Shown in pieces: positions 29,546-60,500 of a stretch of DNA of 64,000 nt (positions are counted from its first letter, which is position 1; each line of letters opens with the position of its first letter). The position numbers and the translations under genes were made by a program. This DNA is from Dendrobates tinctorius (Eukaryota), in the NCBI RefSeq assembly GCF_039654945.1, contig NW_027361688.1:1240001-1304000 (forward strand), read 5' to 3'. The notes under the pieces are model-generated. The model saw only the letters and a list, made by a program, of their open reading frames with translations. It ran no database searches and was not told the DNA's origin.

Positions 29546-29855
29546 GTAATCACAGCTCCGAGCCTGACAAGAGCAGATCCACCACCGCCATCCTGACACC
29601 ACATGTTACAGAGAACAAAGAGCAGAAGAAACCATCAGCCCATGTGCACAGCCAATCAGCACTCAGTAGGGCTATGGCTCCGCCCACAGGCAGCTCCAGA
29701 TTACTCCCCCCAGGCCCTCAGTGTTAACCCATTAGTGCCTGCAATGTATCCAGCTGCAGCAGCACAGGCTGCAGTCATCCCAGCCCAGGACTATCAGCAG
29801 CCCCTTCCCCCTCTCCCTCCCCAGGAGCTGTAGCTTCTCCTCAGAAGATGTGGGT

Positions 29856-29871
29856 GGCTCTTAAAAGAGCC
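29856..29871 (-). terminator. Histone 3' stem-loop (H4)
   Basis: Minus strand AAA-GGCTCTTTTAAGAGCC-ACCCA. Confidence 0.95.
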
Positions 29872-29903
29872 TTTGGGTTGTCAGGATAGAGAAGAGAATA
29901 CAA

Positions 29904-30415
<512 letters not shown>

Positions 30416-31247
30416 ATTGTTTTGTTCTTTTCCGCTTCTACAGGGATGACACTAAAAATAGTCAGAAACCTGATTCCTCTCCGCGGTGACATCCTGCTCG
30501 GAGTAATTACAATGTGAGAGCCGGACCTGCTATATTCTCTCCATCCATAGAGTAATGTATAACCGCCATATACTGCTGTATACCTGTAATATACCACTAT
30601 ATTTCTCCATGTAGTGCTATAAACCCCCATATTGTGCTTTATACCCTCCATATTGTGCTCTGCTCATTTATCTCAGTGACAGGTTCTGCAGCGATAAACA
30701 AGTGATCGGCTTCTCAATGACAATGTGAGATTCAGACCTAGAAATAGATCAATCTTTGGGATCTTATTGGCCAGGAGCCTCCACCAATATGCGGAGCAAA
30801 GGGTGTGTAATATCAGAGGAACGTCAGTGAGAAAGTGCAGAGAGCTCTGATCAGAATGAGGACAAACTGCTGGAAACATCGCTGACTACAAAGAGCCAAC
30901 AGCCCATCTCCACCTACTATCAGCAGAACAATGGACACCAGGCCCCAGCGCTCTGGGAGAGAACCGGATTTAATGAGAGAGGAGCAACCGATCATCTATG
31001 GCTGCCTGCACCTGCTCCTCCACTGTCAGACTATTCCTGATGTTCCCCATCATTCTAAATCTCACTACAACCCTCATCTCCCTCTCCATTTTACTATCCT
31101 TTAATCCCCAACCTCTAATGCCAGATACATTGATCTGATCTCTTCCTCCAGCTAACACACGAGGTGCCAGTAAGTGCAGACACATTCCCCAGGGAGAGGA
31201 GCGAGATACAGACACGCAGTCACAGCTCTGCTGTAGACGGGGTGGGT

Positions 31248-32398: not shown

Positions 32399-32437
32399 GC
32401 GCTGCCACCGACCCCCGTATCATCCACACAACCCAAA

Positions 32438-32453
32438 GGCTCTTCTAAGAGCC
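32438..32453 (+). terminator. Histone 3' stem-loop (H2A)
   Basis: AAA-GGCTCTTCTAAGAGCC-ACCCA, HDE-like ACAAGAGCTG downstream. Confidence 0.95.
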
Positions 32454-33473: not shown

Positions 33474-33938
<465 letters not shown>

Positions 33939-35025: not shown

Positions 35026-35036
35026 AGCGCTATGTA

Positions 35037-37589: not shown

Positions 37590-40500
37590 ATAATGCTGTA
37601 TATCGCCATATAGTGTCACCCCCCATGTGGTGCTGTATATCGCCATATAGTGTCACCCCCCATGTGGTGCTGTATATCGCCATATAGTGTCACCACCCCA
37701 TGTGGTGCTGTATATCGCCATATAGTGTCACACCCCATGTGGTGCTGTATATCGCCATATAGTGTCACCCCCATGTGGTGCTTTATATCGCCATATAGTG
37801 TCACCCCAAATGTGGTGCTGTATATCGCCATATAGTGTCAAACTCCATGTGGTGCTGTATATCGAAATATAGTGTCCCCCCCCATGTGGTGCTGTATATC
37901 GCCATATAGTGTCACCCCCCCATGTTGTGCTGTATTTCGCCATATAGTGTCACCCCCCCATGTTGTGCTGTATTTCACCATATAGTGTCACCCCCCATGT
38001 GGTGCTGTATATCGCCATATAGTGGCACCCCCCCATGGCACCCCCCCATGTGGTGCTGTATATCGCCATATAGTGTCACCCCCCATGTGGTGCTGTATAT
38101 CGCCATATAGTGTCACCCCCCATGTGGTGCTGTATATCGCCATATAGTGTCACCCCCCCATGTTGTGCTGTATTTCACCATATAGTGTCACCCCCCATGT
38201 GATGCTGTATATCGCCATATAGTGGCACCCCCCCATGGCACCCCCCCATGTGGTGCTGTATATCGCCATATAGTGTCACCCCCCATGTGGTGCTGTATAT
38301 CGCCATATAGTGTCACCCCCCATGTGGTGCTGTATATCGCCATATAGTGTCACCCCCCATGTGGTGCTGTATATCGCCATATAGTGTCACCCCCATGTGG
38401 TGCTGTATATCGCCATATAGTGTCACCCCCCATGTGGTGCTGTATATCACCATATAGTGTCACCCCCCCATGTGGTGCTGTATATCGCCATATAGTGTCA
38501 CCCCCCATGTGGTGCTGTATATCGCCATAGTGTCACCCCCATGCGGTGCTGTATATCGCCATATAGTGTCACCCCCCCATGTGGTGCTGTATATCGCCAT
38601 ATAGTGTCACCCCCATGTGGTGCTGTATATCGCCATATAGTGTCACCCCCCCATGTGGTTGCTGTACATCGCCATATAGTGTCACCCCCCATGTGGTGCT
38701 GTATATCGCCATATAGTGTCACCCCCATGTGGTGCTGTATATCGCCATATAGTGTCACCCCCATGTGGTGCTGTATATCGCCATACAGTGTCACCCCCAT
38801 GTGGTGCTGTATATCGCCATATAGTGTCACCCCCCATGTGGTGCTGTATTTCGCCATAGTGTCACCCCCCCATGTGGTGCTGTATATCGCCATATAGTGT
38901 CACCCCCCCATGTGGTGCTGTATATCGCCATATAGTGTCACCCCCATGTGGTGCTGTATATCGACATATAGTGTCACCCCCCATGTGGTGCTGTATGTCG
39001 CCATATAGTGTCACCCCCCCATGTGGTGCTGTATGTCGCCATATAGTGTCACCCTCCCATGTGGTGCTGTATTTCGCCATATAGTGTCACCCCCCATGTG
39101 GTGCTGTATATCGCCATATAGTGTCACCCCCCCATGTGGTGCTGTATTTCGCCATATAGTGTCACCCCCCATGTGGTGCAGTACATCGCCATATAGTGTC
39201 ACCCCCCATGTGGTGCTGTATATCGCCATATAGTGTCACCCCCCCATGTGGTGCTGTATATCGCCATATAGTGTCACCCCCCATGTGGTGCTGTATATCG
39301 CCATATAGTGTCACCCCCCATGTGGTGCTGTACATCGCCATATAGTGTCACCCCCCCATGTGGTGCTGTATATCGCCATATAGTGTCACCCCCCATGTGG
39401 TGCTGTATGTCGCCATATAGTGTCACCCCCCATGTGGTGCTGTATGTCGCCATATAGTGTCACCCCCCATGTGGTGCTGTATGTCGCCATATAGTGTCAC
39501 CCCCCATGTGGTGCTGTATATCGCCATATAGTGTCACCCCCCATGTGGTGCTGTATATCGCCATATAGTGTCACCTCCATGTGGTGCTGTATATCGCCAT
39601 ATAGTGTCACCTCCATGTGGTGCTGTATATCGCCATATAATGTCACCCCCCCATGTGGGGCTGTATATCGCCATATAGTGTCACCCCCCATGTGGGGCTG
39701 TATGTCGCCATATAGTGTCACCCCCATGTGGTGCTGTACGTCGCCATATAGTGTCACCCCCATGTGGTGCTGTACGTCGCCATATAGTGTCACCCCCATG
39801 TGGTGCTGTACGTCGCCATATAGTGTCACCCCCCCATGTCGTGCTGTACGTCGCCATATAGTGTCACCCCCCATGTGGTGCTGTACATCGCCATATAGTG
39901 TCACCCCCCATGTGGTGCTGTACATCGCCATATAGTGTCACCCCCCATGTGGTGCTGTATATCGCCATATAGTGTCACCCCCCATGTGGGGCTGTATATC
40001 GCCATATAGTGTCACCCCCCATGTGGTGCTGTATATCGCCATATAGTGTCACCGCCCATGTGGTGCTGTATATCGCCATATAGTGTCACCCCCCATGTGG
40101 TGCTGTATATCGCCATATAGTGTCACCCCCATGTGCTGCTGTATATCGCCATATAGTGTCACCCCCCATGTGGTGCTGTATATCGCCATATAGTGTCACC
40201 CCCATGTGGTGCTGTATATCGCCATATAGTGTCACCCCCCATGTGGTGCTGTATATCGCCATATAGTGTCACCCCCCATGTGGTGCTGTATATCGCCATA
40301 TAGTGTCACCCCCCATGTGGTGCTGTATATCGCCATATAGTGTCACCCCCCATGTGGTGCTGTATGTCGCCATATAGTGTCACCCCCCATGTGGTTGCTG
40401 TACGTCGCCATATAGTGTCACCCCCCATGTGGTGCTGTATATCGCCATTTAGTGTCACCCCCCATGTGGTGCTGTATATCGCCATATAGTGTCACCACCC

Positions 40501-42130
40501 CATGTGGTGCTGTATATCGCCATATAGTGTCACCCCCCATGTGGTGCTGTATATCGCCATATAGTGTCACCCCCCATGTGGTGCTGTATATCGCCATATA
40601 GTGTCACCCCCCATGTGGTGCTGTATATCGCCATATAGTGTCACCCTCCATGTGGTGCTGTATATCGCCATATAGTGTCACCCCCATGTGGTGCTGTATA
40701 TCGCCATATAGTGTCACCCCCCATGTGGTGCTGTATATCGCCATATAGTGTCACCCCCCCATGTGGTGCTGTATATCGCCATATAGTGTCACCCTCCATG
40801 TGGTGCTGTATATCGCCATATAGTGTCACCCTCCATGTGGTGCTGTATATCGCCATATAGTGTCACCCTCCATGTGGTGCTGTATATCGCCATATAGTGT
40901 CACCCTCCATGTGGTGCTGTATATCGCCATATAGTGTCACCCCCCTATGTGGTGCTGTATATCGCCATATAGTGTCACCCTCCATGTGGTGCTGTATATC
41001 GCCATATAGTGTCACCCCCCATGTGGTGCTGTATATCGCCATATAGTGTCACCCCCCATGTGGTGCTGTATATCGCCATATAGTGTCACCCCCCATGTGG
41101 TGCTGTATATCGCCATATAGTGTCACCCCCCATGTGGTGCTGTATATCGCCATAGTGTCACCCTCCATGTGGTGCTGTATATCGCCATATAGTGTCACCC
41201 CCATGTGGTGCTGTATATCGCCATATAGTGTCACCCCCCATGTGGTGCTGTATATCGCCATATAGTGTCACCCCCCCATGTGGTGCTGTATATCGCCATA
41301 TAGTGTCACCCTCCATGTGGTGCTGTATATCGCCATATAGTGTCACCCTCCATGTGGTGCTGTATATCGCCATATAGTGTCACCCTCCATGTGGTGCTGT
41401 ATATCGCCATATAGTGTCACCCCCCTATGTGGTGCTGTATATCGCCATATAGTGTCACCCTCCATGTGGTGCTGTATATCGCCATATAGTGTCACCCCCC
41501 ATGTGGTGCTGTATATCGCCATATAGTGTCACCCCCCATGTGGTGCTGTATATCGCCATATAGTGTCACCCCCCATGTGGTGCTGTATATCGCCATATAG
41601 TGTCACCCCCCATGTGGTGCTGTATATCGCCATAGTGTCACCCTCCATGTGGTGCTGTATATCGCCATATAGTGTCACCCCCATGTGGTGCTGTATATCG
41701 CCATATAGTGTCACCCCCCATGTGGTGCTGTATATCGCCATATAGTGTCACCCCCCCATGTGGTGCTGTATATCGCCATATAGTGTCACCCTCCATGTGG
41801 TGCTGTATATCGCCATATAGTGTCACCCTCCATGTGGTGCTGTATATCGCCATATAGTGTCACCCCCCATGTGGTGCTGTATATCGCCATATAGTGTCAC
41901 CCCCCCATGTGGTGCTGTATATCGCCATATAGTGTCACCCTCCATGTGGTGCTGTATATCGCCATATAGTGTCACCCTCCATGTGGTGCTGTATATCGCC
42001 ATATAGTGTCACCCTCCATGTGGTGCTGTATATCGCCATATAGTGTCACCCCCCATGTGGTGCTGTATATCGCCATATAGTGTCACCCTCCATGTGGTGC
42101 TGTATATCGCCATATAGTGTCACCCTCCAT
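37590..42130. repeat. 37-bp satellite, ~120 copies
   Basis: Unit GTGTCACCCCCCATGTGGTGCTGTATATCGCCATATA with variable C-run. Confidence 0.98.
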
Positions 42131-42287
42131 CCATAGTGCTGGATACAGGATATCACGCCTTATACACTGAATATCGGGCTGTATTCCTCCTTATGATGCG
42201 GTCTGTGCCCAAATACTACAATACTCCCTCCATATAGTGCTGTATACGGCCACATAGCGCATTATGTTTCCCTCCACACAGCGCTGA

Positions 42288-42700
42288 GCACCACGTGTTA
42301 CACTGAGAACAAACAGCGCGAGAAACTAACAGCCGTTGGGCGGGAATTTCATATTCAGTGCTCAGCCAATCAGCACTCAGTACGGCTATGGCTCCGCCCT
42401 CAGGGTCACTTCCCCGCAGACACTCAGAGTTAACCCTTCAGTGGTCGGTGTTTCCGGCTCCCGTAGAGCAGACTGCAGCCATCCGGGCACAGCGCGGTCA
42501 CCAGCCCCTCCCCCAGCAGCAGGAGCTGCGGCTTCTCCTCACATGTGGGCGGAGCACAGAGCTGTTGGGGGTTTTGAATTTCCCGCACTTTTTCCTGTCA
42601 TTTTCCCGCTTTTATCTCCAGGACGTTTCACTAGTCACAGAGCAATGGCGGCGTGAGACCAGAGAAATCACTGAGATTATCACTTGTCAGGGGAGCAAAG
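42288..42700. other. Paralog of the H4 flanking regions with no H4 coding sequence
   Basis: 42288-42572 aligns with ~29596-29880; 42572-42620 aligns with ~30399-30440. Confidence 0.7.
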
Positions 42701-42704
42701 GGTG

Positions 42705-45700
42705 ATATCCTGCTGTATACCCCCATATAGTGCTATATACCTCCATATGCTGCTGCGTACCCCCATATAGTGCTATATACCCTCCATATCCTGCTGTATA
42801 CCCCATATAGTGCTATATACTCTCCATATCCTGCTGCATACCCCCATATAGTGCTATATACCCTCCATATCCAGCTATATACCCCCATATAGTGCTATAT
42901 ACCCTCCATATCCTGCTGTATACCCCCATATAGTGCTATATACCCTCCATATCCTGCTGTATACCCCCATATAGTGCTATATACCCTCCATATCCAGCTA
43001 TATACCCCAATATAGTGCTATATACCCTCCATATCCTGCTGTATACCCCCATATAGTGCTATATACCCTCCATATCCTGCTGCATACCCCCATATAGTGC
43101 TATATACCCTCCATATCCAGCTATATACCCCCATATAGTGCTATATACCCTCCATATCCTGCTGTATACCCCCATATAGTGCTATATACCCTCCATATCC
43201 TGCTGTATACCCCCATATAGTGCTATATACCCTCCATATCCAGCTATATACCCCCATATAGTGCTATACACCCTCCATATCCTGCTGTATACCCCATATA
43301 GTGCTATATACCCTCCATATCTTGCTGTATACCCCCATATCCTGCTGTATACCCCATATAGTGCTATATACCATCCATATCCTGCTTAATACCCCCATAT
43401 AGTGCTATATACCATCCATATCCTGCTGTATACCCCATATAGTGCTATATACCATCCATATCCTGCTTAATACCCCCATATAGTGCTATATACCTCCATA
43501 TCCTGCTGTATACCCCCATATAGTGCTATATACCCTCCATATCCTGCTGTATACCCCCATATAGTGCTATATACTCTCCATATCCTGCTGTATACCCCAT
43601 ATAGTGCTATATACCTCCATATCCTGCTGTATACCCCATATAGTGCTATATACCCTCCATATCTTGCTGTATACCCCCATATCCTGCTGTATACCCCATA
43701 TAGTGCTATATACCATCCATATCCTGCTTAATACCCCCATATAGTGCTATATACCTCCATATCCTGCTGCATACCCCATATAGTGCTATATACCCTCCAT
43801 ATCCTGCTGTATACCCCATATAGTGCTATATACCCTCCATATCCTGCTTAATACCCCCATATAGTGCTATATCCCCTCCATATCCTGCTGCATACCCCCA
43901 TATAGTGCTATATACCCTCCATATCCTGCTGTATACCCCCATATAGTGCTATATACCCTCCATATCCTGCTGTATACCCCATATAGTGCTATATACCCTC
44001 CATATCCTGCTTAATACCCCCATATAGTGCTATATCCCCTCCATATCCTGCTGTATACCCCCATATAGTGCTATATACCCTCCATATCCTGCTGTATACC
44101 CCCTTATAGCGCTATATACCCTCCATATCCTGCTGCATACCCCCATATAGTACTATATACCCTCCATATCCTGCTGTAAACCCCATGTAGTGCTATATAC
44201 CCTCCATATCCTGCTGTATACCCCCATATACTGCTATACACCCTCCATATCCTGCTGTATACCCCCATATGTTGCTATATACCCTCCATATCCTGCTGTA
44301 TACCCCCATATAGTGCTATATACCCTCCATATCCAGCTATATACCCCCATATATTGCTATATACCCTCCATATCCTGCTGTATACCTCCATATTGTGCTA
44401 TATACACTCCATATCCTGCTGTATACCCCCATATAGTGCTATATACCCTCCATGTCCTGCTGTATACCTCCATATAGTGCTATATACCCTCCATATCCAG
44501 CTGTATACCCCCATATAGTGCTATATACTCTCCATATCCTGCTGCATACCCCCATATAGTGCTATACACCCTCCATATCCAGCTATATACCCCCATATAT
44601 TGCTATATACCCTCCATATCCTGCTGTATACCCCCATATAGTGCTATATACCCTCCATATCTTGCTGTATACCTCCATATAGTGCTATATACTCTCCATA
44701 TCCTGCTGCATACCCCCATATAGTGCTATACACCCTCCATATCAAGCTATATACCCCCATATGTTGCTATATACTCTCCATATCCTGCTGTATACCCCCA
44801 TATAGTGCTATATACCCTCCATATCCTGCTGTATACCTCCATATAGTGCTATATACCCTCCATATCCAGCTGTATACCTCCATATAGTGCTATATACTCT
44901 CCATATCCTGCTGCATACCCCCATATAGTGCTATATACCCTCCATATCCAGCTATATACCCCCATATATTGCTATATACCCTCCATATCCTGCTGCATAC
45001 CCCCATATAGTGCTATATACCCTCCATATCCTACTGTATACCCCCATATAGTACTATATACCCTCCATATCCTGCTGTAAACCCCATGTAGTGCTATATA
45101 CCCTCCATATCCTGCTGTATACCCCCATATAGTGCTATACACCCTCCATATCCTGCTGTATACCCCCATATGTTGCTATATACCCTCCATATCCTGCTGT
45201 ATACCCCCATATAGTGCTATATACCCTCCATATCCAGCTATATACCCCCATATATTGCTATATACCCTCCATATCCTGCTGTATACCTCCATATTGTGCT
45301 ATATACACTCCATATCCTGCTGTATACCCCATATAGTGCTATATACCCTCCATATCTTGCTGTATACCCCCATATCCTGCTGTATACCCCATATAGTGCT
45401 ATATACCATCCATATCCTGCTTAATACCCCCATATAGTGCTATATACCTCCATATCCTGCTGCATACCCCATATAGTGCTATATACCCTCCATATCCTGC
45501 TGTATACCCCATATAGTGCTATATACCCTCCATATCCTGCTTAATACCCCCATATAGTGCTATATCCCCTCCATATCCTGCTGCATACCCCCATATAGTG
45601 CTATATACCCTCCATATCCTGCTGTATACCCCCATATAGTGCTATATACCCTCCATATCCTGCTGTATACCCCATATAGTGCTATATACCCTCCATATCC

Positions 45701-48700
45701 TGCTTAATACCCCCATATAGTGCTATATCCCCTCCATATCCTGCTGTATACCCCCATATAGTGCTATATACCCTCCATATCCTGCTGTATACCCCCTTAT
45801 AGCGCTATATACCCTCCATATCCTGCTGCATACCCCCATATAGTACTATATACCCTCCATATCCTGCTGTAAACCCCATGTAGTGCTATATACCCTCCAT
45901 ATCCTGCTGTATACCCCCATATACTGCTATACACCCTCCATATCCTGCTGTATACCCCCATATGTTGCTATATACCCTCCATATCCTGCTGTCTACCCCC
46001 ATATAGTGCTATATACCCTCCATATCCAGCTATATACCCCCATATATTGCTATATACCCTCCATATCCTGCTGTATACCTCCATATTGTGCTATATACAC
46101 TCCATATCCTGCTGTATACCCCCATATAGTGCTATATACCCTCCATGTCCTGCTGTATACCTCCATATAGTGCTATATACCCTCCATATCCAGCTGTATA
46201 CCCCCATATAGTGCTATATACTCTCCATATCCTGCTGCATACCCCCATATAGTGCTATACACCCTCCATATCCAGCTATATACCCCCATATATTGCTATA
46301 TACCCTCCATATCCTGCTGTATACCCCCATATAGTGCTATATACCCTCCATATCTTGCTGTATACCTCCATATAGTGCTATATACTCTCCATATCCTGCT
46401 GCATACCCCCATATAGTGCTATACACCCTCCATATCAAGCTATATACCCCCATATGTTGCTATATACTCTCCATATCCTGCTGTATACCCCCATATAGTG
46501 CTATATACCCTCCATATCCTGCTGTATACCTCCATATAGTGCTATATACCCTCCATATCCAGCTGTATACCTCCATATAGTGCTATATACTCTCCATATC
46601 CTGCTGCATACCCCCATATAGTGCTATATACCCTCCATATCCAGCTATATACCCCCATATATTGCTATATACCCTCCATATCCTGCTGCATACCCCCATA
46701 TAGTGCTATATACCCTCCATATCCTGCTGTATACCCCCATATAGTACTATATACCCTCCATATCCTGCTGTAAACCCCATGTAGTGCTATATACCCTCCA
46801 TATCCTGCTGTATACCCCCATATAGTGCTATACACCCTCCATATCCTGCTGTATACCCCCATATGTTGCTATATACCCTCCATATCCTGCTGTATACCCC
46901 CATATAGTGCTATATACCCTCCATATCCAGCTATATACCCCCATATATTGCTATATACCCTCCATATCCTGCTGTATACCTCCATATTGTGCTATATACA
47001 CTCCATATCCTGCTGTATACCCCAATATAGTGCTATATACCCTCCATGTCCTGCTGTATACCTCCATATAGTGCTATATACCCTCCATATCCAGCTGTAT
47101 ACCCCCATATAGTGCTATATACTCTCCATATCCTGCTGCATACCCCCATATAGTGCTATACACCCTCCATATCCAGCTATATACCCCCATATATTGCTAT
47201 ATACCCTCCATATCCTGCTGTATACCCACATATAGTGCTATATACCCTCCATATCTTGCTGTATACCTCCATATAGTGCTATATACTCTCCATATCCTGC
47301 TGCATACCCCCATATAGTGCTATACACCCTCCATATCAAGCTATATACCCCCATATGTTGCTATATACTCTCCATATCCTGCTGTATACCCCCATATAGT
47401 GCTATATACCCTCCATATCCTGCTGTATACCTCCATATAGTGCTATATACCCTCCATATCCAGCTGTATACCTCCATATAGTGCTATATACTCTCCATAT
47501 CCTGCTGCATACCCCCATATAGTGCTATATACCCTCCATATCCAGCTATATACCCCCATATATTGCTATATACTCTCCATATCCTGCTGTATACCCCCAT
47601 ATAGTGCTATATACCCTCCATATCCTGCTGTATACCTCCATATAGTGCTATATACCCTCCATATCCAGCTGTATACCCCCATATAGTGCTATATACTCTC
47701 CATATCCTGCTGCATACCCCCATATAGTGCTATATACCCTCCATATCCAGCTATATACCCCCATATATTGCTATATACCCTCCATATCCTTCTGTATACC
47801 CCCATATAGTGCTATATACCCTCCATATCCAGCTATATACCCCCATATAGTGCTATATACCCCCATATAGTGCTATATACCCTCCATATCCAGCTGTATA
47901 CCCCCATATAGTGCTATGTACCTCCATATCCTGCTATATACCCTCCATATCCTGCTGTATACCTCCTTATAGTGCTATATACCCTTCATATCCAGCTATA
48001 TACCCCCATATAGTGCTATATACTCTCCATATCCTGCTGCATACCCCCATATAGTGCTATATACCCTCCATATCCAGCTATGTACCCCAATATATTGCTA
48101 TATACCCTCCATATCCTGCTATATACCCTCCATATCCAGCTATATACCCCCATATAGTGCTATATACCCCCATATAGTGCTATATACCCCCATATAGTGC
48201 TATATACCCCCATATAGTGCTATATACCCTCCATATCCAGCTGTATACCCCCATATAGTGCTATATACATCCATATCCTGCTGTATACCCCCATATAGTG
48301 CTATATACCTCCATATCCTGCTGTATACCCCCATATAGCGCTATATACCTCTATATCCTGCTGTATACCCCCATATAGTGCTATATACCCTCCATATGCT
48401 GCTGTATACCCCATATGATGCTATATACAATCCATATCCTGCTGTATACCCCCATATAGTGCTATATACCCTCCATATCCTGCTGTATACCCCCATATAG
48501 TGCAACATACCCTCCATCTCCTGCTGCATACCCCCATATAGTGCTATATACCCTCCATATCCAGCTATATACCCCCATATAATGCTATACACCCTCCATA
48601 TCCTGCTGTATACCCCATATAGTGCTATATACCCTCCATTTCTTGCTGTATACCCCCATATCCTGCTGTATACCCCATATAGTGCTATATACCATCCATA

Positions 48701-51700
48701 TCCTGCTTAATACCCCCATATAGTGCTATATACCCTCCATATCCTGCTGCATACCCCCATATAGTGCTATATACCCTCCATATCCTGCTGCATACCCCCA
48801 TATAGTGCTATATACCCTCCATATCCTGCTGTATACCCCATATAGTGCTATATACCCTCCATATCCTGCTTAATACCCCCATATAGTGCTATATCCCCTC
48901 CATATCCTGCTGCATACCCCCATATAGTGCTATATACCCTCCATATCCTGCTGTATACCCCCATATAGTGCTATATACCCTCCATATCCTGCTGTATACC
49001 CCATATAGTGCTATATACCCTCCATATCCTGCTTAATACACCCATATAGTGCTATATCCCCTCCATATCCTGCTGTATACCCCCATATAGTGCTATATAC
49101 CCTCCATATCCTGCTGTATACCCCCTTATAGCGCTATATACCCTCCATATCCTGCTGCATACCCCCATATAGTGCTATATACCCTCCATATCCTGCTGTA
49201 AACCCCCATATAGTGCTATATACCCTCCATATCCTGCTGTATACCCCCATATAGTGCTATACACCCTCCATATCCAGCTATATACCCCCATATGTTGCTA
49301 TATACCCTCCATATCCTGCTGTATACCCCCATATAGTGCTATATACCCTCCATATCCAGCTATATACCCCCATATATTGCTATATACCCTCCATATCCTG
49401 CTGTATACCTCCATATTGTGCTATATACACTCCATATCCTGCTGTATACCCCCATATAGTGCTATATACCCTCCATGTCCTGCTGTATACCTCCATATAG
49501 TGCTATATACCCTCCATATCCAGCTGTATACCCCCATATAGTGCTATATACTCTCCATATCCTGCTGCATACCCCCATATAGTGCTATACACCCTCCATA
49601 TCCAGCTATATACCCCCATATATTGCTATATACCCTCTATATCCTGCTGTATACCCCCATATAGTGCTATATACCCTCCATATCTTGCTGTATACCTCCA
49701 TATAGTGCTATATACTCTCCATATCCTGCTGCATACCCCCATATAGTGCTATACACCCTCCATATCCAGCTATATACCCCCATATAGTGCTATACACCCT
49801 CCATATCAAGCTATATACCCCCATATATTGCTATATACCCTCCATATCCAGCTATATACCCCCATATATTGCTATATACTCAACATATCCTGCTGTATAC
49901 CCCCATATAGTGCTATATACCCTCCATATCCAGCTATATACCCCCATATAGTGCTATATACCCCCATATAGTGCTATATACCCTCCATATCCAGCTGTAT
50001 ACCCCCATATAGTGCTATATACCTCCATATCCTGCTGTATACCCCCATATAGTGCTATATACCCTCCATATCCTGCTGTATACCTCCATATAGTGCTATA
50101 TACCCTCCATATCCGGCTATATACCCCCATATAGTGCTATATACTCTCCATATCCTGCTGCATACCCCCATATAGTGCTATATACCCTCCATATCCGGCT
50201 ATATACCCCCATATAGTGCTATATACCCTCCATATCCTGCTGTATACCCCCATATAGTGCAACATACCCTCCATCTCCTGCTGCATACCCCCATATAGTG
50301 CTATATACCCTCCATATCCAGCTATATACCCCCATATAGTGCTATACACCCTCCATATCCTGCTGTATACCCCATATAGTGCTATATACCCTCCATATCT
50401 TGCTGTATACCCCCATATCCTGCTGTATACCCCATATAGTGCTATATACCATCCATATCCTGCTTAATACCCCCATATAGTGCTATATACCCTCCATATC
50501 CTGCTGGATACCCCCATATAGTGCTATATACCCTCCATATCCTGCTGCATACCCCCATATAGTGCTATATACCCTCCATATCCTGCTGTATACCCCATAT
50601 AGTGCTATATACCCTCCATATCCTGCTTAATACCCCCATATAGTGCTATATCCCCTCCATATCCTGCTGCATACCCCCATATAGTGCTATATACCCTCCA
50701 TATCTTGCTGTATACCCCCATATCCTGCTGTATACCCCATATAGTGCTATATACCATCCATATCCTGCTTAATACCCCCATATAGTGCTATATACCCTCC
50801 ATATCCTGCTGCATACCCCCATATAGTGCTATATACCCTCCATATCCTGCTGCATACCCCCATATAGTGCTATATACCCTCCATATCCTGCTGTATACCC
50901 CATATAGTGCTATATACCCTCCATATCCTGCTTAATACCCCCATATAGTGCTATATCCCCTCCATATCCTGCTGCATACCCCCATATAGTGCTATATACC
51001 CTCCATATCCTGCTGTATACCCCCATATAGTGCTATATACCCTCCATATCCTGCTGTATACCCCATATAGTGCTATATACCCTCCATATCCTGCTTAATA
51101 CACCCATATAGTGCTATATCCCCTCCATATCCTGCTGTATACCCCCATATAGTGCTATATACCCTCCATATCCTGCTGTATACCCCCTTATAGCGCTATA
51201 TACCCTCCATATCCTGCTGCATACCCCCATATAGTGCTATATACCCTCCATATCCTGCTGTAAACCCCCATATAGTGCTATATACCCTCCATATCCTGCT
51301 GTATACCCCCATATAGTGCTATACACCCTCCATATCCAGCTATATACCCCCATATGTTGCTATATACCCTCCATATCCTGCTGTATACCCCCATATAGTG
51401 CTATATACCCTCCATATCCAGCTATATACCCCCATATATTGCTATATACCCTCCATATCCTGCTGTATACCTCCATATTGTGCTATATACACTCCATATC
51501 CTGCTGTATACCCCCATATAGTGCTATATACCCTCCATGTCCTGCTGTATACCTCCATATAGTGCTATATACCCTCCATATCCAGCTGTATACCCCCATA
51601 TAGTGCTATATACTCTCCATATCCTGCTGCATACCCCCATATAGTGCTATACACCCTCCATATCCAGCTATATACCCCCATATATTGCTATATACCCTCT

Positions 51701-54700
51701 ATATCCTGCTGTATACCCCCATATAGTGCTATATACCCTCCATATCTTGCTGTATACCTCCATATAGTGCTATATACTCTCCATATCCTGCTGCATACCC
51801 CCATATAGTGCTATACACCCTCCATATCCAGCTATATACCCCCATATAGTGCTATACACCCTCCATATCAAGCTATATACCCCCATATATTGCTATATAC
51901 CCTCCATATCCAGCTATATACCCCCATATATTGCTATATACTCTCCATATCCTGCTGTATACCCCCATATAGTGCTATATACCCTCCATATCCAGCTATA
52001 TACCCCCATATAGTGCTATATACCCCCATATAGTGCTATATACCCTCCATATCCAGCTGTATACCCCCATATAGTGCTATATACCTCCATATCCTGCTGT
52101 ATACCCCCATATAGTGCTATATACCCTCCATATCCTGCTGTATACCTCCATATAGTGCTATATACCCTCCATATCCGGCTATATACCCCCATATAGTGCT
52201 ATATACTCTCCATATCCTGCTGCATACCCCCATATAGTGCTATATACCCTCCATATCCGGCTATATACCCCCATATAGTGCTATATACCCTCCATATCCT
52301 GCTGTATACCCCCATATAGTGCAACATACCCTCCATCTCCTGCTGCATACCCCCATATAGTGCTATATACCCTCCATATCCAGCTATATACCCCCATATA
52401 GTGCTATACACCCTCCATATCCTGCTGTATACCCCATATAGTGCTATATACCCTCCATATCTTGCTGTATACCCCCATATCCTGCTGTATACCCCATATA
52501 GTGCTATATACCATCCATATCCTGCTTAATACCCCCATATAGTGCTATATACCCTCCATATCCTGCTGCATACCCCCATATAGTGCTATATACCCTCCAT
52601 ATCCTGCTGCATACCCCCATATAGTGCTATATACCCTCCATATCCTGCTGTATACCCCATATAGTGCTATATACCCTCCATATCCTGCTTAATACCCCCA
52701 TATAGTGCTATATCCCCTCCATATCCTGCTGCATACCCCCATGTAGTGCTATATACCCTCCATATCCTGCTGTATACCCCCATATAGTGCTATATACCCT
52801 CCATATCCTGCTGTATACCCCATATAGTGCTATATACCCTCCATATCCTGCTTAATACACCCATATAGTGCTATATCCCCTCCATATCCTGCTGTATACC
52901 CCCATATAGTGCTATATACCCTCCATATCCTGCTGTATACCCCCTTATAGCGCTATATACCCTCCATATCCTGCTGCATACCCCCATATAGTGCTATATA
53001 CCCTCCATATCCTGCTGTAAACCCCCATATAGTGCTATATACCCTCCATATCCTGCTGTATACCCCCATATAGTGCTATACACCCTCCATATCCAGCTAT
53101 ATACCCCCATATGTTGCTATATACCCTCCATATCCTGCTGTATACCCCCATATAGTGCTATATACTCTCCATATCCAGCTATATACCCCCATATATTGCT
53201 ATATACCCTCCATATCCTGCTGTATACCTCCATATTGTGCTATATACACTCCATATCCTGCTGTATACCCCCATATAGTGCTATATACCCTCCATGTCCT
53301 GCTGTATACCTCCATATAGTGCTATATACCCTCCATATCCAGCTGTATACCCCCATATAGTGCTATATACTCTCCATATCCTGCTGCATACCCCCATATA
53401 GTGCTATACACCCTCCATATCCAGCTATATACCCCCATATATTGCTATATACCCTCTATATCCTGCTGTATACCCCCATATAGTGCTATATACCCTCCAT
53501 ATCTTGCTGTATACCTCCATATAGTGCTATATACTCTCCATATCCTGCTGCATACCCCCATATAGTGCTATACACCCTCCATATCCAGCTATATACCCCC
53601 ATATAGTGCTATACACCCTCCATATCAAGCTATATACCCCCATATATTGCTATATACCCTCCATATCCAGCTATATACCCCCATATATTGCTATATACTC
53701 TCCATATCCTGCTGTATACCCCCATATAGTGCTATATACCCTCCATATCCAGCTATATACCCCCATATAGTGCTATATACCCCCATATAGTGCTATATAC
53801 CCTCCATATCCAGCTGTATACCCCCATATAGTGCTATATACCTCCATATCCTGCTGTATACCCCCATATAGTGCTATATACCCTCCATATCCTGCTGTAT
53901 ACCTCCATATAGTGCTATATACCCTCCATATCCGGCTATATACCCCCATATAGTGCTATATACTCTCCATATCCTGCTGCATACCCCCATATAGTGCTAT
54001 ATACCCTCCATATCCGGCTATATACCCCCATATAGTGCTATATACCCTCCATATCCTGCTGTATACCCCCATATAGTGCAACATACCCTCCATCTCCTGC
54101 TGCATACCCCCATATAGTGCTATATACCCTCCATATCCAGCTATATACCCCCATATAGTGCTATACACCCTCCATATCCTGCTGTATACCCCATATAGTG
54201 CTATATACCCTCCATATCTTGCTGTATACCCCCATATCCTGCTGTATACCCCATATAGTGCTATATACCATCCATATCCTGCTTAATACCCCCATATAGT
54301 GCTATATACCCTCCATATCCTGCTGCATACCCCCATATAGTGCTATATACCCTCCATATCCTGCTGCATACCCCCATATAGTGCTATATACCCTCCATAT
54401 CCTGCTGTATACCCCATATAGTGCTATATACCCTCCATATCCTGCTTAATACCCCCATATAGTGCTATATCCCCTCCATATCCTGCTGCATACCCCCATA
54501 TAGTGCTATATACCCTCCATATCCTGCTGTATACCCCCATATAGTGCTATATACCCTCCATATCCTGCTGTATACCCCATATAGTGCTATATACCCTCCA
54601 TATCCTGCTTAATACACCCATATAGTGCTATATCCCCTCCATATCCTGCTGTATACCCCCATATGGTGCTATATACCCTCCATATCCTGCTGTATACCCC

Positions 54701-57538
54701 CTTATAGCGCTATATACCCTCCATATCCTGCTGCATACCCCCATATAGTGCTATATACCCTCCATATCCTGCTGTAAACCCCCATATAGTGCTATATACC
54801 CTCCATATCCTGCTGTATACCCCCATATAGTGCTATACACCCTCCATATCCAGCTATATACCCCCATATGTTGCTATATACCCTCCATATCCTGCTGTAT
54901 ACCCCCATATAGTGCTATATACCCTCCATATCCAGCTATATACCCCCATATATTGCTATATACCCTCCATATCCTGCTGTATACCTCCATATTGTGCTAT
55001 ATACACTCCATATCCTGCTGTATACCCCCATATAGTGCTATATACCCTCCATGTCCTGCTGTATACCTCCATATAGTGCTATATACCCTCCATATCCAGC
55101 TGTATACCCCCATATAGTGCTATATACTCTCCATATCCTGCTGCATACCCCCATATAGTGCTATACACCCTCCATATCCAGCTATATACCCCCATATATT
55201 GCTATATACCCTCTATATCCTGCTGTATACCCCCATATAGTGCTATATACCCTCCATATCTTGCTGTATACCTCCATATAGTGCTATATACTCTCCATAT
55301 CCTGCTGCATACCCCCATATAGTGCTATACACCCTCCATATCCAGCTATATACCCCCATATAGTGCTATACACCCTCCATATCAAGCTATATACCCCCAT
55401 ATATTGCTATATACCCTCCATATCCAGCTATATACCCCCATATATTGCTATATACTCTCCATATCCTGCTGTATACCCCCATATAGTGCTATATACCCTC
55501 CATATCCAGCTATATACCCCCATATAGTGCTATATACCCCCATATAGTGCTATATACCCTCCATATCCAGCTGTATACCCCCATATAGTGCTATATACCT
55601 CCATATCCTGCTGTATACCCCCATATAGTGCTATATACCCTCCATATCCTGCTGTATACCTCCATATAGTGCTATATACCCTCCATATCCGGCTATATAC
55701 CCCCATATAGTGCTATATACTCTCCATATCCTGCTGCATACCCCCATATAGTGCTATATAACCTCCATATCCGGCTATATACCCCCATATAGTGCTATAT
55801 ACCCTCCATATCCTGCTGTATACCCCCATATAGTGCAACATACCCTCCATCTCCTGCTGCATACCCCCATATAGTGCTATATACCCTCCATATCCAGCTA
55901 TATACCCCCATATAGTGCTATACACCCTCCATATCCTGCTGTATACCCCATATAGTGCTATATACCCTCCATATCTTGCTGTATACCCCCATATCCTGCT
56001 GTATACCCCATATAGTGCTATATACCATCCATATCCTGCTTAATACCCCCATATAGTGCTATATACCCTCCATATCCTGCTGTATACCCCATATAGTGCT
56101 ATATACCCTCCATATCCTGCTTAATACCCCCATATAGTGCTATATCCCCTCCATATCCTGCTGCATACCCCCATATAGTGCTATATACCCTCCATATCTT
56201 GCTGTATACCCCCATATCCAGCTGTATACCCAATATAGTGCTATATACCATCCATATCCTGCTTAATACCCCCATATAGTGCTATATACCCTCCATATCC
56301 TGCTGCATACCCCCATATAGTGCTATATACCCTCCATATCCTGCTGCATACCCCCATATAGTGCTATATACCCTCCATATCTGCTGTATACCCCATATAG
56401 TGCTATATACCCTCCATATCCTGCTTAATACCCCCATATAGTGTTATATCCCCTCCATATCCTGCTGCATACCCCCATATAGTGCTATATACCCTCCATA
56501 TCCTGCTGTATACCCCCATATAGTGCTATATACCCTCCATATCCTGCTGTATACCCCATATAGTGCTATATACCCTCCATATCCTGCTTAATACACCCAT
56601 ATAGTGCTATATCCCCTCCATATCCTGCTGTATACCCCCATATAGTGCTATATACCCTCCATATCCTGCTGTATACCCCCTTATAGCGCTTTATACCCTC
56701 CATATCCTGCTGCATACCCCCATATAGTGCTATATACCCTCCATATCCTGCTGTAAACCCCCATATAGTGCTATATACCCTCCATATCCTGCTGTATACC
56801 CCCATATAGTGCTATACACCCTCCATATCCAGCTATATACCCCCATATGTTGCTATATACCCTCCATATCCTGCTGTATACCCCCATATAGTGCTATATA
56901 CCCTCCATATCCAGCTATATACCCCCATATATTGCTATATACCCTCCATATCCTGCTGTATACCTCCATATTGTGCTATATACACTCCATATCCTGCTGT
57001 ATACCCCCATATAGTGCTATATACCCTCCATGTCCTGCTGTATACCTCCATATAGTGCTATATACCCTCCATATCCAGCTGTATACCCCCATATAGTGCT
57101 ATATACTCTCCATATCCTGCTGCATACCCCCATATAGTGCTATACACCCTCCATATCCAGCTATATACCCCCATATATTGCTATATACCCTCTATATCCT
57201 GCTGTATACCCCCATATAGTGCTATATACCCTCCATATCTTGCTGTATACCTCCATATAGTGCTATATACTCTCCATATCCTGCTGCATACCCCCATATA
57301 GTGCTATACACCCTCCATATCCAGCTATATACCCCCATATAGTGCTATACACCCTCCATATCAAGCTATATACCCCCATATATTGCTATATACCCTCCAT
57401 ATCCAGCTATATACCCCCATATATTGCTATATACTCTCCATATCCTGCTGTATACCCCCATATAGTGCTATATACCCTCCATATCCAGCTATATACCCCC
57501 ATATAGTGCTATATACCCCCATATAGTGCTATATACCC
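42705..57538. repeat. 41-bp satellite (21+20-bp subunits) with higher-order repeats, left of L2
   Basis: Unit CCCCATATAGTGCTATATACCCTCCATATCCTGCTGTATAC. Confidence 0.98.
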
Positions 57539-60500
57539 CCTATATAGCCCCCTCATGCCCTCTCCTGCTCCCACCTGCTAACACTTTCTCTGCTCCTTCT
57601 CACTGCTGGTGATATCTCTCCAAATCCTGGTCCTCCTCACCACATTCCCACAGTCATTTCTACCTCCCATCCAGGCTCTATCACAACCTTCCGTAACCTC
57701 TCCAACCTTATACCCATTCACCCAGCCCCCGCTTCCCCAGTCCCACTAACAGGAGCTCTGTGGAACGCTCGCTCTGTCTGCAACAAGCTTTCCTACATCC
57801 AAGATCTTTTTGTTACTACCAAACTCTCCTTCCTCGCCATCACCGAAACCTGGCTCACCCCTTCTGACACAGCCTCTCCTGCTGCACTTTCGTATGGCGG
57901 CTTCCACCTTTCTCACACCCCCCGCCCCAGCAGCAAACATGGTGGAGGAGTTGGTTTTCTCCTGTCAGATACCTGCTCCTTCACCCCAATCCCACTGCCA
58001 CCCTCTGTTACCCTCCCTTCCTTTGAGGTGCACTCTGTGCGCATCTACTCCCCCTCCAACCTCCAACTGGCTGTCATCTACCGCCCCCCAGGGCCAGCCA
58101 CCACCTTCTTTGACCACTTCACCACCTGGTTACTTCATTTCCTTTCCGCGGACATCCCTACTATCATCATGGGCGACTTCAACATCCCCATTGACACTTC
58201 CCTCTCAGCTGCCACTAAACTTCTATCTCTCACTTCCTCCTTCGGCCTCACTCAATGGTCTTCTGCAGCCACTCACAAAGATGGCCACACACTAGACCTC
58301 ATCTTCACCCGCCTCTGCGCCCTATCTAGCCTCTCTAACTCACCTCTTCCTCTCTCTGACCACAACCTGCTCACATTCTCTTCCCCCTTCACTCCATGTC
58401 TACAATCCCCACCCCACAAACTTTCACACCCTCGCAGGAATCTTAAACACCTTGACCTACACTCATTCTCCGAATCCCTCCTCCCTCTTACAGATATAAG
58501 TTCCTTACACAATGCGGATGACGCTGCCGCTCTATATAACACCACAATAGCTGTAGCTTTGGAATCCGCTGCCTCACTTACACATACCAAAACTCGCAAA
58601 ATCAACAGACAGCCCTGGCACACCAGCCTGACCAAAGAGCTGAGGCGAGCTTCCAGGGCTGCTGAGCGCAGATGGAAAAGATCCCACTCCAACGAGCATT
58701 TCATCGCATTCAAACAGTCCCTCACTACTTTCAATACCACACTCGCCACAGCTAAACAAACCTACTTCTCATCTCTCATATCCTCCCTGTCTCACAACCC
58801 TAAACAGTTATTCAACACCTTCAATTCTCTCCTCCGCCCCCCAGCACCTCCTCCCTCCCCACTCATCTCAGCTGAAGACTTTGCCTCATTTTTCAAGCAG
58901 AAAATTGATAACATCAGGGACAGTTTTGGTCAACAACCCCCAGAGCCCTTCCTCCCGACTTCCCAGCCCTCCACCTTCAAAACCAACTTCTCCACCATTA
59001 CAGAAGATCGACTCTCCACTCTACTCTCAAGATCACATCTCACCACCTGTGCACTCGACCCGATCCCATCCCACTTCATCCCAAACCTCACCACAGTCTT
59101 CATCCCAACCCTAACCCATCTCTTCAACCTATCACTAACAACTGGTGTTTTCCCCTCAAGCTTTAAACATGCCTCCATCACACCTATCCTCAAAAAGCCC
59201 TCTCTTGACCCATCCTCTGTATCTAGCTATCGCCCTATATCACTTCTCCCATACGCCTCCAAGCTACTGGAACAACACGTCTACCTTGAACTGTCCTCCC
59301 ATCTCTCTTCTTGCTCCCTCTTCGACCGCTTACAATCTGGCTTCCGGTCACACCACTCCACTGAAACTGCCCTTACTAAGGTCACCAATGACCTCTTAAC
59401 TGCCAAGAGCAAGCGACACTACTCTGTCCTCCTCCTCCTGGACCTGTCGGCTGCCTTTGACACAGTGGACCATTCCCTATTATTACAGACCCTCTCATCC
59501 CTCGGCATCACAGACTTGGCCCTCTCCTGGATCTCATCATACCTAACAGACCGGACATTCAGCGTCTCCCACTCACACACCACCTCCTCACCTCGCCCCC
59601 TATCTGTCGGAGTCCCACAAGGTTCAGTCCTAGGGCCCCTGCTGTTCTCTATTTACACCTTTGGCCTGGGACAGCTCATAGAATCTCATGGCTTTCAGTA
59701 TCATCTTTATGCTGATGACACACAGATCTACATCTCTGGACCAGATATCACCTCCCTACTAACCAGAATCCCTCAATGTCTGTCCACTATTTCATCCTTC
59801 TTCTCCACTAGATATCTGAAACTCAACATGGACAAAACAGAATTCATCATCTTTCCCCCATCTCACGTGACCCCCCCTACGAACCTATCAATTACAGTAA
59901 ATGACTGCCCACTCTCCCCAGTCCCACAAGCTCGCTGCCTCGGAGTAATCCTTGATGCTGATCTCTCCTTCAAACCACATATCCAAACCCTTTCCACTTC
60001 CTGCCGACTTCAACTCAAAAATATTTCACGCATCCGTTCATTCCTCACCCAAGAATCTGCAAAAACCCTAGTCCATGCCCTCATCATCTCTCGCCTTGAC
60101 TACTGCAACCTCATGCTCTGCGGCCTCCCCTCAAACACTCTCGCACCCCTCCAATCTATTCTAAACTCTGCTGCCCGACTAATCCACCTGTCCCCCCGCT
60201 ATTCCCCAGCTTCTCCCCTCTGTCAATCCCTTCACTGGCTCCCAATTGCCCAGAGACTCCATTACAAAACCCTAACCATGACATACAAAGCCATCCACAA
60301 CTTGTCTCCTCCATACATCTGTGACCTCGTCTCCCGGTACTTTCCTGCACGCAACCTCCGATCCTCACAAGATCTCCTTCTCTACTCCCCTCTTATCTCC
60401 TCTTCCCACAATCGCATACAAGATTTCTCTCGCGCATCACCCCTACTCTGGAACTCTCTACCACAACATATCAGACTCTCACCTACCATCGAAACCTTCA

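What the first reader, a model, noticed from the sequence alone, without database searches (positions are those of the whole stretch)
42130..42720. Gene-less copy of the H4 locus wedged between two satellites
Seen: 42288-42572 is colinear with the H4 3' flank (CACCAC.TGTTAC, GAGAACAAA, CAGCCAATCAGCACTCAGTA.GGCTATGGCTCCGCCC, GTTAACCC, CAGGAGCTG..GCTTCTCCTCA, ATGTGGG.GG) and runs directly into TTTTGAATTTCCCGC, which lies upstream of H4 at ~30399. About 520 bp holding the H4 CDS and core promoter are missing and the stem-loop position is degenerate. The island keeps CpGs, CCAAT, a GC box and E2F-like TTTCCCGC/GGCGGGAA sites. Inference: a duplicated H4 cassette that lost its gene, or the pre-insertion state; the retained motifs could be a regulatory or boundary element inside satellite DNA.
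Basis: partly seen in the sequence, partly recalled or inferred. Interest (0 to 1): 0.7.

Follow-up and report, generated by a model that had tools for sequence, protein, structure and literature searches.

The report
Histone H4 slot with gene deleted
This is a real leftover of a histone H4 gene unit in the dyeing poison frog: one old deletion of about 520 bases removed the gene, and the empty unit was then copied at least seven times within the histone cluster. It looks like an ordinary genomic relic, not a new kind of element.

Summary
Window 42289-42611 is colinear with the flanks of the H4 gene at 29904-30215(-). The 3' flank matches at 75-81% (blastn E 3e-16) and runs straight into the distal H4 promoter block TTTTGAATTTCCCGC. 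About 524 bp are absent. The island lies between a 37-bp satellite (4.5 kb) and a 41-bp satellite (over 18 kb).

One correction: the stem-loop is gone, not degenerate. The 19 bases at that spot come from the H4 promoter spacer between the CCAAT box and the E2F-like site.

The genome is Dendrobates tinctorius. In 20-kb loci fetched from the same contig I found six more ghosts. Four of the seven, including the window's, carry the identical junction. All seven form one clade (support 99), separate from the filled H4 flanks, and a third lineage with a decayed H4 serves as outgroup. So H4 was lost once and the ghost unit then multiplied. It always sits in the H4 slot of H2B/H2A units. The block satellite-ghost-satellite itself recurs three times. 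Contigs from two other species labels span the same junction.

The pre-insertion and transposon readings are rejected. A regulatory role for the kept NF-Y, Sp1 and E2F-like motifs is untested and only weakly hinted. Earlier first-reader notes of this scan flagged apparently the same thing on other DNA of this genome.

The parts
37594..42130 (.). 37-bp satellite (about 122 units) on the left of the ghost. The same array precedes ghosts G4 and G5 elsewhere in the cluster.
   Evidence: TRF. L004:12026-14733 and L005:14496-15913 align without a break to window 39833/41121-42526 at 94.4%.
42131..42288 (.). Degenerate satellite-like spacer. It is shared with G4 and G5 but not with the ghosts that lie next to H2A/H2B pairs.
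   Evidence: Alignment of seven ghosts; weak satellite matches.
42289..42552 (-). Homologue of the H4 3' flank; the H4 sense strand is the minus strand. It holds an E2F-like site (42338-42352), CCAAT (42363-42373), a GC box (42390-42399), the likely U7-binding downstream element (42520-42541) and the remnant of the post-stem-loop ACCCAC (42543-42552).
   Evidence: blastn; alignment A1; comparison with the 3' ends of H2A, H2B, H3 and H4; motif coordinates.
42548..42556 (.). Deletion junction, placed to within about 5 bases. The 3' side ends in GTGGGCGG. The promoter side begins at AGCACAG, just past where the promoter's CCAAT box would be.
   Evidence: Identical junction in G0, G1, G2 and G3. 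Ungapped matches to H4 promoters of L018. Contigs of filled copies begin to fit at 42548, with loose ends reading ...CTGATT.
42553..42611 (-). Distal H4 promoter piece: the CCAAT-to-E2F spacer (42553-42571), TTTTGAATTTCCCGC (42572-42586) and a second TTTTCCCGC (42601-42609).
   Evidence: In contigs of three species labels this piece is multi-copy and lies next to H4 promoters.
42612..42710 (.). Spacer between the promoter piece and the 41-bp array. It holds ATGGCGGCGTGAG (42645-42657). Related species do not conserve it.
   Evidence: an 83-bp skip in organism B, and 33 letters replaced by 67 in organism C; only a weak alignment to 30438-30540.
42711..57545 (.). 41-bp satellite. It is the expanded form of the short 41-bp repeat that lies upstream of filled H4 genes (30541-30659 in this window). 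It resumes at 60779-63992 after a LINE insertion.
   Evidence: TRF. 30530-30670 matches the 41-bp consensus at 78% over 110 bp, E 7e-17. The same array follows ghosts in L003, L004, L005 and L008.
29593..30437 (-). Filled reference unit. It comprises the 3' flank (29593-29856), stem-loop (29856-29871), H4 CDS (29904-30215), core promoter with TATA, octamer, GC box and CCAAT (30216-30381), and distal E2F-like block (30399-30437). The ghost lacks about 29858-30381.

Best explanation
The island is the H4 position of a histone repeat unit from which the H4 gene was cut out.

**The deletion (shown).** One deletion of about 524 bp ran from the first bases of the 3' stem-loop to the CCAAT box of the promoter. 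It fused the H4 downstream region to the distal H4 promoter. The downstream region still carries the ACCCAC remnant and the likely U7-binding element.

**Timing and spread (shown).** This happened once, in an old lineage of the unit that is 75-80% identical to today's intact H4 units. The empty unit was then copied along with its neighbours. Some copies lie beside H2B/H2A pairs, in tandem units of about 2.7 kb. Others lie inside a larger block of 37-bp array, ghost and 41-bp array.

**The window's copy (shown).** Here the unit's own two flanking repeat arrays have grown to 4.5 kb and over 18 kb.

**Present role (inferred).** The ghost most likely does nothing now and drifts as a relic. Its NF-Y, Sp1 and E2F-type motifs are inherited parts of the H4 unit's flanks, not a new element.
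For: - **Colinear similarity.** The match to both H4 flanks is significant, with about 520 bp missing.
- **More ghosts.** Six further ghosts lie in loci fetched from the same contig of GCA_039654945.1. They are 82-95% identical to the window's copy.
- **Shared junction.** G0 to G3 carry the identical junction string.
- **Tree.** Ghosts form one clade (99) and filled flanks another (97). A third lineage that still carries a decayed H4 is the outgroup.
- **Position.** Every ghost sits where H4 sits in filled units, followed by the 41-bp array and H2B(-)/H2A(+).
- **3' signals.** The ghost keeps the H4-specific sequence downstream of the stem-loop at the same spacing as in H2A, H2B and H3. It has no stem-loop.
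- **Junction zone.** It matches H4 promoter spacers 35/39 and 31/39 without gaps.
- **Other samples and species.** Contigs from an independent sample, and from two other species labels, span the junction. They also show the second-order G4/G5 deletion.
- **Rate of divergence.** The satellite plus ghost aligns at 94.4% as one block. The ghost is therefore no better conserved than the neighbouring repeat.
Against: - **Motif conservation.** Motif positions differ less among the ghosts than the rest of the element (9/460 against 69/1400 cells, Fisher p 0.005).
- **CpG content.** Ghost copies keep CpG observed/expected of 0.48-0.68. The same flank in intact H4 units is at 0.05-0.10 and has lost a 20-bp E2F-like piece.
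- **Deep conservation.** The CCAAT block is conserved across all three old lineages.

These points could mean that the module is used. No RNA, chromatin or methylation data were available to settle it.
Confidence: 0.75

Rival explanations
1. The ghost is a working orphan regulatory module. Its NF-Y (CCAAT), Sp1 (GC box) and E2F-type sites would act as an S-phase promoter or enhancer. It could drive the neighbouring H2B/H2A pairs or start non-coding transcripts that run into the satellites.
For: - **Motifs.** They are intact in G0, G1 and G2.
- **Motif cells.** Fewer differ among the ghosts.
- **CpG.** Observed/expected is 0.58-0.68 in the best copies, like the histone coding regions (0.55-0.70) and above most spacers.
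- **CCAAT block.** It is conserved in three old lineages.
Against: - **Control motif.** The U7-binding element, which has no use here, is as well conserved as the 'promoter' motifs.
- **Decayed or cut copies.** G3 has lost most motif CpGs (observed/expected 0.28). G4 and G5 have lost the whole junction and E2F block.
- **Rate.** The ghost diverges like the adjoining satellite.
- **Putative first exon.** The region around it is deleted or replaced in related species.
- **RNA.** No listed holder of the sequence is on record as RNA, and the RNA-guessed runs of the species hold next to none of its words. This is weak evidence.
- **CpG background.** It is already about 0.4-0.5 here.
Confidence: 0.18
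2. It is the pre-insertion state. The fused flanks would be ancestral, and a compact H4 gene was later inserted to make the filled units.
For: The missing piece is a nearly complete minimal gene, from CCAAT box to stem-loop.
Against: - **3' signals kept.** The ghost keeps the post-stem-loop ACCCAC remnant and the downstream element. Both belong to the histone gene's own 3' processing signal.
- **Outgroup.** The outgroup lineage P already has H4 next to this flank.
- **Other assembly.** H4 promoters there have the same CCAAT-spacer-E2F order in one piece.
- **No insertion marks.** The filled units show no target duplication and no transposon ends.
Confidence: 0.03
3. The similarity comes from a common dispersed repeat or transposon that is unrelated to histone genes, or it is an assembly artefact.
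For: The region is full of transposons and repeats. Examples are the palindromic element at 29305-29515, the Tc1 element at 35031-36263 and the LINE at about 57.8-60.7 kb.
Against: - **No stray copies in the window.** The flank has no other copy in its 64 kb.
- **All copies in histone units.** All twelve copies found lie in histone units.
- **No copies outside arrays.** None lie in the fetched loci that hold no histone array (L002, L009, L010, L011, L012).
- **Independent contigs.** Contigs from other samples and species span the junction.
Confidence: 0.03

Closest known systems
Histone pseudogenes and variant repeat units in tandem histone gene families (general knowledge, not a citation)
   Same: A member of a multi-copy histone unit has lost a gene and persists, and is even amplified, inside the cluster. 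Other decayed members lie nearby. They are a frameshifted H4 at L003:620-921, a decayed H4 at L003:11301-11435 and a truncated H2B/H2A pair at window 6421-6965.
   Different: Here the coding sequence did not decay by point mutation. A clean internal deletion took the whole gene from CCAAT box to stem-loop, so only fused flanks remain. That exact fusion is then propagated in several copies.
Histone orphons (solitary histone genes away from the main cluster, described in sea urchin; from my own knowledge)
   Same: Both are by-products of duplication and rearrangement of histone repeat units.
   Different: An orphon is a gene without its cluster. This is a cluster slot without its gene.
Newt histone clusters embedded in satellite DNA, with read-through transcription into satellites on lampbrush chromosomes
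   Same: Both are amphibian histone genes interleaved with long satellite arrays. PMC2114352 attributes the transcription of newt satellite 2 to read-through from upstream structural gene promoters. That histone clusters specifically are separated by satellite 1 is from my own knowledge.
   Different: Here the satellites are expansions of the unit's own flanking repeat arrays. No transcription data were available, and the ghost has neither a core promoter nor a processing stem-loop.
TATA-less cell-cycle promoters with CCAAT, Sp1 and E2F or CHR sites
   Same: The motif content matches: CAGCCAATCAG, GGCTCCGCCC, TTTGAA next to TTTCCCGC, and an inverted GGCGGGAA.
   Different: The motifs come from two separate parts of the H4 unit that a deletion brought together. 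No transcription start and no conserved exon were shown.

Membership tests
Replication-dependent histone H4 gene unit | H4 open reading frame | tested here: not met
   tblastn with the window's H4 finds only 29907-30215 in the window. The island's ORFs are interrupted relative to the paralog by gaps of 8, 2, 6 and 3 bases.
Replication-dependent histone H4 gene unit | 3' stem-loop (Rfam RF00032) | tested here: not met
   The real H4 scores 38.6 bits. The island gives no hit even at E 10. The bases at that position are promoter-derived.
Replication-dependent histone H4 gene unit | Downstream purine-rich element at the usual distance after the stem-loop | tested here: met
   On the H4 sense strand, the island's GAGGAGAAGCCGCAGCTCC aligns with H4's GAGGAGAAGCTACAGCTCC, preceded by (G/A)CCCACAT. 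That it binds U7 is inferred from position, not tested.
Replication-dependent histone H4 gene unit | Core promoter (TATA, H4-specific GGTCC element, GC box, CCAAT) | tested here: not met
   All of these lie in the missing 29858-30381. Only the distal E2F-like block is kept.
Transposable element or dispersed repeat | Copies at many unrelated sites, with terminal repeats and target duplications | tested here: not met
   The window holds no other copy. All copies in 18 fetched loci lie in the H4 slot of histone units. A whole-genome census was not possible.
Processed (retro-copied) pseudogene | Copy of the transcript only, with no promoter or flank | tested here: not met
   The reverse holds: the flanks are kept and the transcribed part is missing.
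CpG island (length 200 or more, G+C 0.5 or more, observed/expected 0.6 or more) | Numeric criteria | tested here: met
   42131-42710 has G+C 0.533 and o/e 0.66; the core has 0.576 and 0.68. The background outside satellites is about 0.5, and other ghosts range from 0.28 to 0.61, so this means little here.
CpG island | Unmethylated in germline or tissues | not testable with these tools
   No methylation data.
Cell-cycle-regulated TATA-less promoter | CCAAT, GC-box and E2F or CHR motifs | tested here: met
   Motif coordinates; the motif search beats shuffles.
Cell-cycle-regulated TATA-less promoter | A transcription start and a transcript | tested here: inconclusive
   No run on record as RNA holds the stretch. 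Only contigs could be laid, and these cannot show starts. The candidate exon at 42645-42657 is not conserved in related species.

The most novel reading that the evidence does not exclude
In the ghost lineage, the deletion brought together the H4 downstream NF-Y/Sp1/E2F module and the distal H4 E2F/CHR block. Together they would form a compact, CpG-rich, TATA-less S-phase promoter. It would be kept in many copies beside H2A/H2B pairs and satellites. It would act as an orphan promoter or enhancer, for example by helping to assemble the histone locus body or by launching satellite transcripts. The same flank in intact H4 units would have gone silent and lost its CpGs.
Probability: 0.12. Interest if true: 0.6.

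Novelty: new member of a known kind. Interest (0 to 1): 0.3.

Why it matters
It shows how a vertebrate histone super-cluster is remodelled. One small deletion produced an H4-less unit, and that unit was then amplified into H2A/H2B-only arrays and satellite-bracketed blocks. This changes the local gene ratio of the cluster.

It also gives a dated marker, the shared junction, for tracing unit turnover among poison frogs.

It further explains several separate first-reader notes of this scan as one family with a single origin: 'ghost H4', 'array that repeatedly loses H4' and 'orphan bidirectional promoter'.

Apart from the untested chance that the retained motifs are used, nothing here calls for a new mechanism.

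Tried and rejected
- **Stem-loop remnant.** Against the window's own H4 alone, the junction zone fits the stem-loop and the promoter equally well (11/17 each). Promoters from another assembly settled it for the promoter.
- **Left satellite as a specific landmark.** The stretch 29042-29195 left of the filled unit matches both satellite consensus sequences only weakly. The left flanks of G1-G3 and G6 give no significant match. Only the right-hand 41-bp array is a specific landmark of the H4 unit.
- **Known RNA in the island.** Rfam gave only chance-level hits.
- **Coding first exons.** The ATGGCGGCG starts are not conserved as coding between lineages, because an 11-base length difference shifts the frame. 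The left one is absent from the window's copy. The right one is deleted or replaced in related species.
- **CpG richness as proof of function.** The background and the histone coding regions have similar values. The unusual feature is the depletion in the filled units' flank.
- **Depth as copy number.** The tool states that summed contig depth is not a copy number, so I used it only to see which parts fit many contigs.
- **Species of the second assembly.** No paper holds GCA_051348905. The table in PMC12822217 that lists GCA_039654945.1 is garbled in the held text, so I did not use it.
- I did not look up the H4 protein or lay reads on the H4 coding sequence. That sequence is shared with human and other animals and would have returned unrelated or human contigs.
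Full report
**1. What is in the window**

The window holds a histone cluster:

| Gene | Coordinates | Strand |
|---|---|---|
| H4 | 29904-30215 | - |
| H2B | 31295-31675 | - |
| H2A | 32006-32398 | + |
| H3 | 33474-33884 | - |

- The exact H2A and H2B proteins map to NCBI assembly GCA_039654945.1, contig JAYMGB010000008.1. This places the window at about 1,240,001-1,304,000.
- A preprint names that assembly as the Dendrobates tinctorius reference (10.1101/2025.06.11.659201).
- The island 42131-42710 lies between a 37-bp satellite (37594-42130) and a 41-bp satellite. The latter spans 42711-57545 and resumes at 60779-63992 after a LINE insertion.

**2. Check of the observation**

blastn of the island against the H4 locus gives four colinear matches:

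| Island | H4 locus | Identity | E-value |
|---|---|---|---|
| 42284-42334 | 29593-29640 | 80% | 4e-5 |
| 42358-42514 | 29644-29811 | 75.6% | 3e-16 |
| 42520-42541 | 29822-29843 | 91% | 0.002 |
| 42572-42611 | 30399-30437 | 80% | 0.006 |

- The last match includes an identical 15-mer.
- Nothing else in the 64 kb resembles the flank.
- About 520 bp, holding the H4 coding sequence and core promoter, have no counterpart in the island.
- The observation therefore stands at the stated coordinates.

**3. The junction**

- On the H4 sense strand, all four histone genes of the window end in the same way. The stem-loop is followed by ACCCAC and, about 13 bases later, by a purine-rich element.
- The island keeps this tail (GCCCACAT..GAGGAGAAGCCGCAGCTCC) but has no stem-loop. 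Rfam scores the true H4 stem-loop at 38.6 bits and finds nothing in the island at E up to 10.
- Against the window's own H4 alone, the 19 bases 42553-42571 fit the stem-loop and the promoter equally well.
- H4 promoters in a locus from another assembly (L018, GCA_051348905.1, species not identified) resolve this. The island's GGCGGAGCACAGAGCTGTTGGGGGTTTTGAATTTCCCGC matches them 35/39 and 31/39 without gaps. The stem-loop alignment needs gaps and scores only 10-11.
- Contigs of filled copies in three species labels begin to fit the island at 42548, and their loose ends read ...CTGATT, the inverted CCAAT box.
- The deletion therefore ran from the start of the stem-loop to the CCAAT box. In the filled unit's coordinates this is about 29858-30381, or 524 bp.
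- The two sides share a short similar string (GGGCGG against TTGGCTG). This could have served as microhomology; that point is an inference.

**4. It is a family with one origin**

Looking up the exact H2A and H2B proteins returned 20-kb loci from the same genome. The island core finds six more ghosts there:

| Copy | Location | Note |
|---|---|---|
| G1 | L003:4270-4608 | 91% (blastn) to the island core |
| G2 | L005:8263-8621 | 95% (blastn) to the island core |
| G3 | L008:10964-11487 | an insertion lies inside it |
| G4 | L004:14485-14733 | further deletion of about 140 bp |
| G5 | L005:15657-15913 | same further deletion as G4 |
| G6 | L008:13476-13670 | truncated |

- G0 (the window's copy) to G3 carry the identical junction string.
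- The further deletion in G4 and G5 also appears as a joint in contigs of the source species and of organism B.
- Four filled flanks are 96-98% alike: the window's own, L004, L006 and L003. The L003 copy has a 7-base frameshift in H4. These flanks are 71-81% identical to the ghosts.
- A third lineage, P (L003:11040-11300), is 58-66% identical to both. It is followed by a decayed H4 remnant at 11301-11435(-).
- A maximum-likelihood tree rooted on P puts all ghosts in one clade (support 99) and all filled flanks in another (97).
- Taken together, H4 was ancestral in this slot. It was lost once on the ghost stem, and the ghost unit was then copied.

**5. Where the ghosts sit**

- In filled units the order is: 3' flank, H4(-), distal E2F block, short 41-bp array, H2B(-), H2A(+).
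- The ghosts sit in exactly that slot, followed by the 41-bp array and an H2B/H2A pair. In L008 they form tandem units of about 2.7 kb.
- G0, G4 and G5 also share a left spacer and the 37-bp array. L004:12026-14733 and L005:14496-15913 align without a break to window 39833/41121-42526 at 94.4%.
- The arrangement 'satellite, ghost, satellite' is therefore itself a repeated block.
- Within the cluster, the ghost is the H4 slot of the unit that follows H4-H2B-H2A-H3 and the 36-bp array.
- The 41-bp satellite is the expanded form of the short repeat upstream of filled H4 genes. The stretch 30541-30659 matches it at 78%, E 7e-17. The correspondence on the left side is only generic.

**6. Age and reality**

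- All runs could be laid only as contigs. Contigs spanning the junction occur in three places:
  - a second sample of the same species (X5, 2 differences);
  - organism B (X6, 42483-42627, 2 differences in 145);
  - organism C (X8, several contigs).
- Both satellite boundaries are also seen in one or other of the related species.
- The ghost is therefore older than the split of these species labels. The labels are coded, so I cannot name the species.

**7. Does it do anything?**

For a role:
- The CCAAT block is 44/47 identical between ghost and filled flank and is conserved in P as well.
- Motif cells vary less among the ghosts than the rest of the element, 9/460 against 69/1400 (p 0.005). 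The cells are not independent and the motifs were chosen after the fact.
- Ghost CpG observed/expected is 0.48-0.68, against 0.05-0.10 in the filled units' flank. That flank also lacks a 20-bp E2F-like piece that the ghosts and P keep.

Against a role:
- The U7-binding element, useless without a gene, is as well conserved as the promoter-type motifs.
- G3 has lost most motif CpGs, and G4 and G5 have lost the junction and E2F block altogether.
- The ghost diverges in step with the adjacent satellite.
- The stretch right of 42627, which holds the ATGGCGGCG that resembles a first exon, is deleted in organism B and replaced in organism C.
- CpG values of 0.55-0.70 are also typical of the histone coding regions, and the non-satellite background is about 0.5.
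- No listed holder of the sequence is on record as RNA.

I read the ghost as a drifting relic (0.75) and keep a working regulatory module as the main rival (0.18).

**8. Comparison with what is known**

- It belongs with the pseudogenes and variant units of tandem histone families. It differs in that a clean internal deletion removed the gene, and the fused flanks were then amplified.
- It is the inverse of a histone orphon.
- Interleaving with satellites recalls the newt histone clusters. PMC2114352 attributes newt satellite transcription to read-through from upstream gene promoters. No transcription data exist here.

**9. Earlier notes of this scan**

- First readers had flagged three related things on the same contig:
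  - a 'ghost H4 locus' 217 kb beyond this window;
  - an array that 'repeatedly loses H4' 312 kb beyond it;
  - an 'orphan bidirectional cell-cycle promoter repeated four times' just before it.
- The second region overlaps my loci L003 and L004. There the ghosts share one junction, so 'repeated loss' is better read as one loss followed by copying.
- I could not fetch the other two places.

**10. Limits**

- I could not run a whole-genome census.
- No raw reads, RNA, chromatin or methylation data were available.
- The DNA beyond the right-hand satellite was not seen.

Noticed in passing
window 6421-6965: Truncated H2B/H2A pair. The H2B 3' end and middle are fused to the H2A 3' half, and both stem-loops are kept. 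Two internal deletions (about 148 bp and 580 bp relative to 31210-32505) removed the shared promoter and both 5' halves. This is a second case of a roughly 0.5-kb internal deletion in the cluster.
   Followed up: partly
window 29593-29856 and the same flank in L004, L006, L003: The 3' flank of the intact H4 units is almost free of CpG (1-2 sites, observed/expected 0.05-0.10), although the adjoining gene and promoter stand at 0.8-0.9. It also lacks a 20-bp E2F-like piece that the ghost and outgroup lineages keep. Sixteen CpGs are private to the ghost and none to the filled flank.
   Followed up: partly
window 29305-29515: Palindromic element with arms 79.6% alike, inserted just beyond the H4 3' flank. 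It is absent from the ghost copies.
   Followed up: no
window 35031-36263: Tc1/mariner-type element with an intact 346-residue transposase ORF (35185-36225) and 35-bp terminal inverted repeats 97% alike. It lies between the 36-bp array and the 37-bp satellite.
   Followed up: no
window about 57800-60770: LINE with an 840-residue reverse-transcriptase ORF (58028-60550), inserted into the 41-bp satellite, which continues on the far side.
   Followed up: no
L003:620-921 and L003:11301-11435: Two decayed H4 copies in the H2A/H2B array. One has a 7-base deletion in an otherwise near-identical coding sequence. The other is an old remnant, 45% identical over residues 50-103, next to a third lineage of the 3' flank.
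   Followed up: partly
L018:11500-11640 (assembly GCA_051348905.1, species not identified): An H4-type promoter stands without any H4 coding sequence beside it. It has a TATA-like box, a GGACC element, a GC box, an inverted CCAAT box and TTTGAATTTCCCGC. It lies between two H2B genes. This is a different kind of H4 relic in another genome.
   Followed up: no
window 42548-42586, in contigs of run X1: One contig shows this 39-base promoter piece repeated head to tail (a joint that goes back 39 bases). Some H4 promoters in the genome therefore seem to carry it twice.
   Followed up: no
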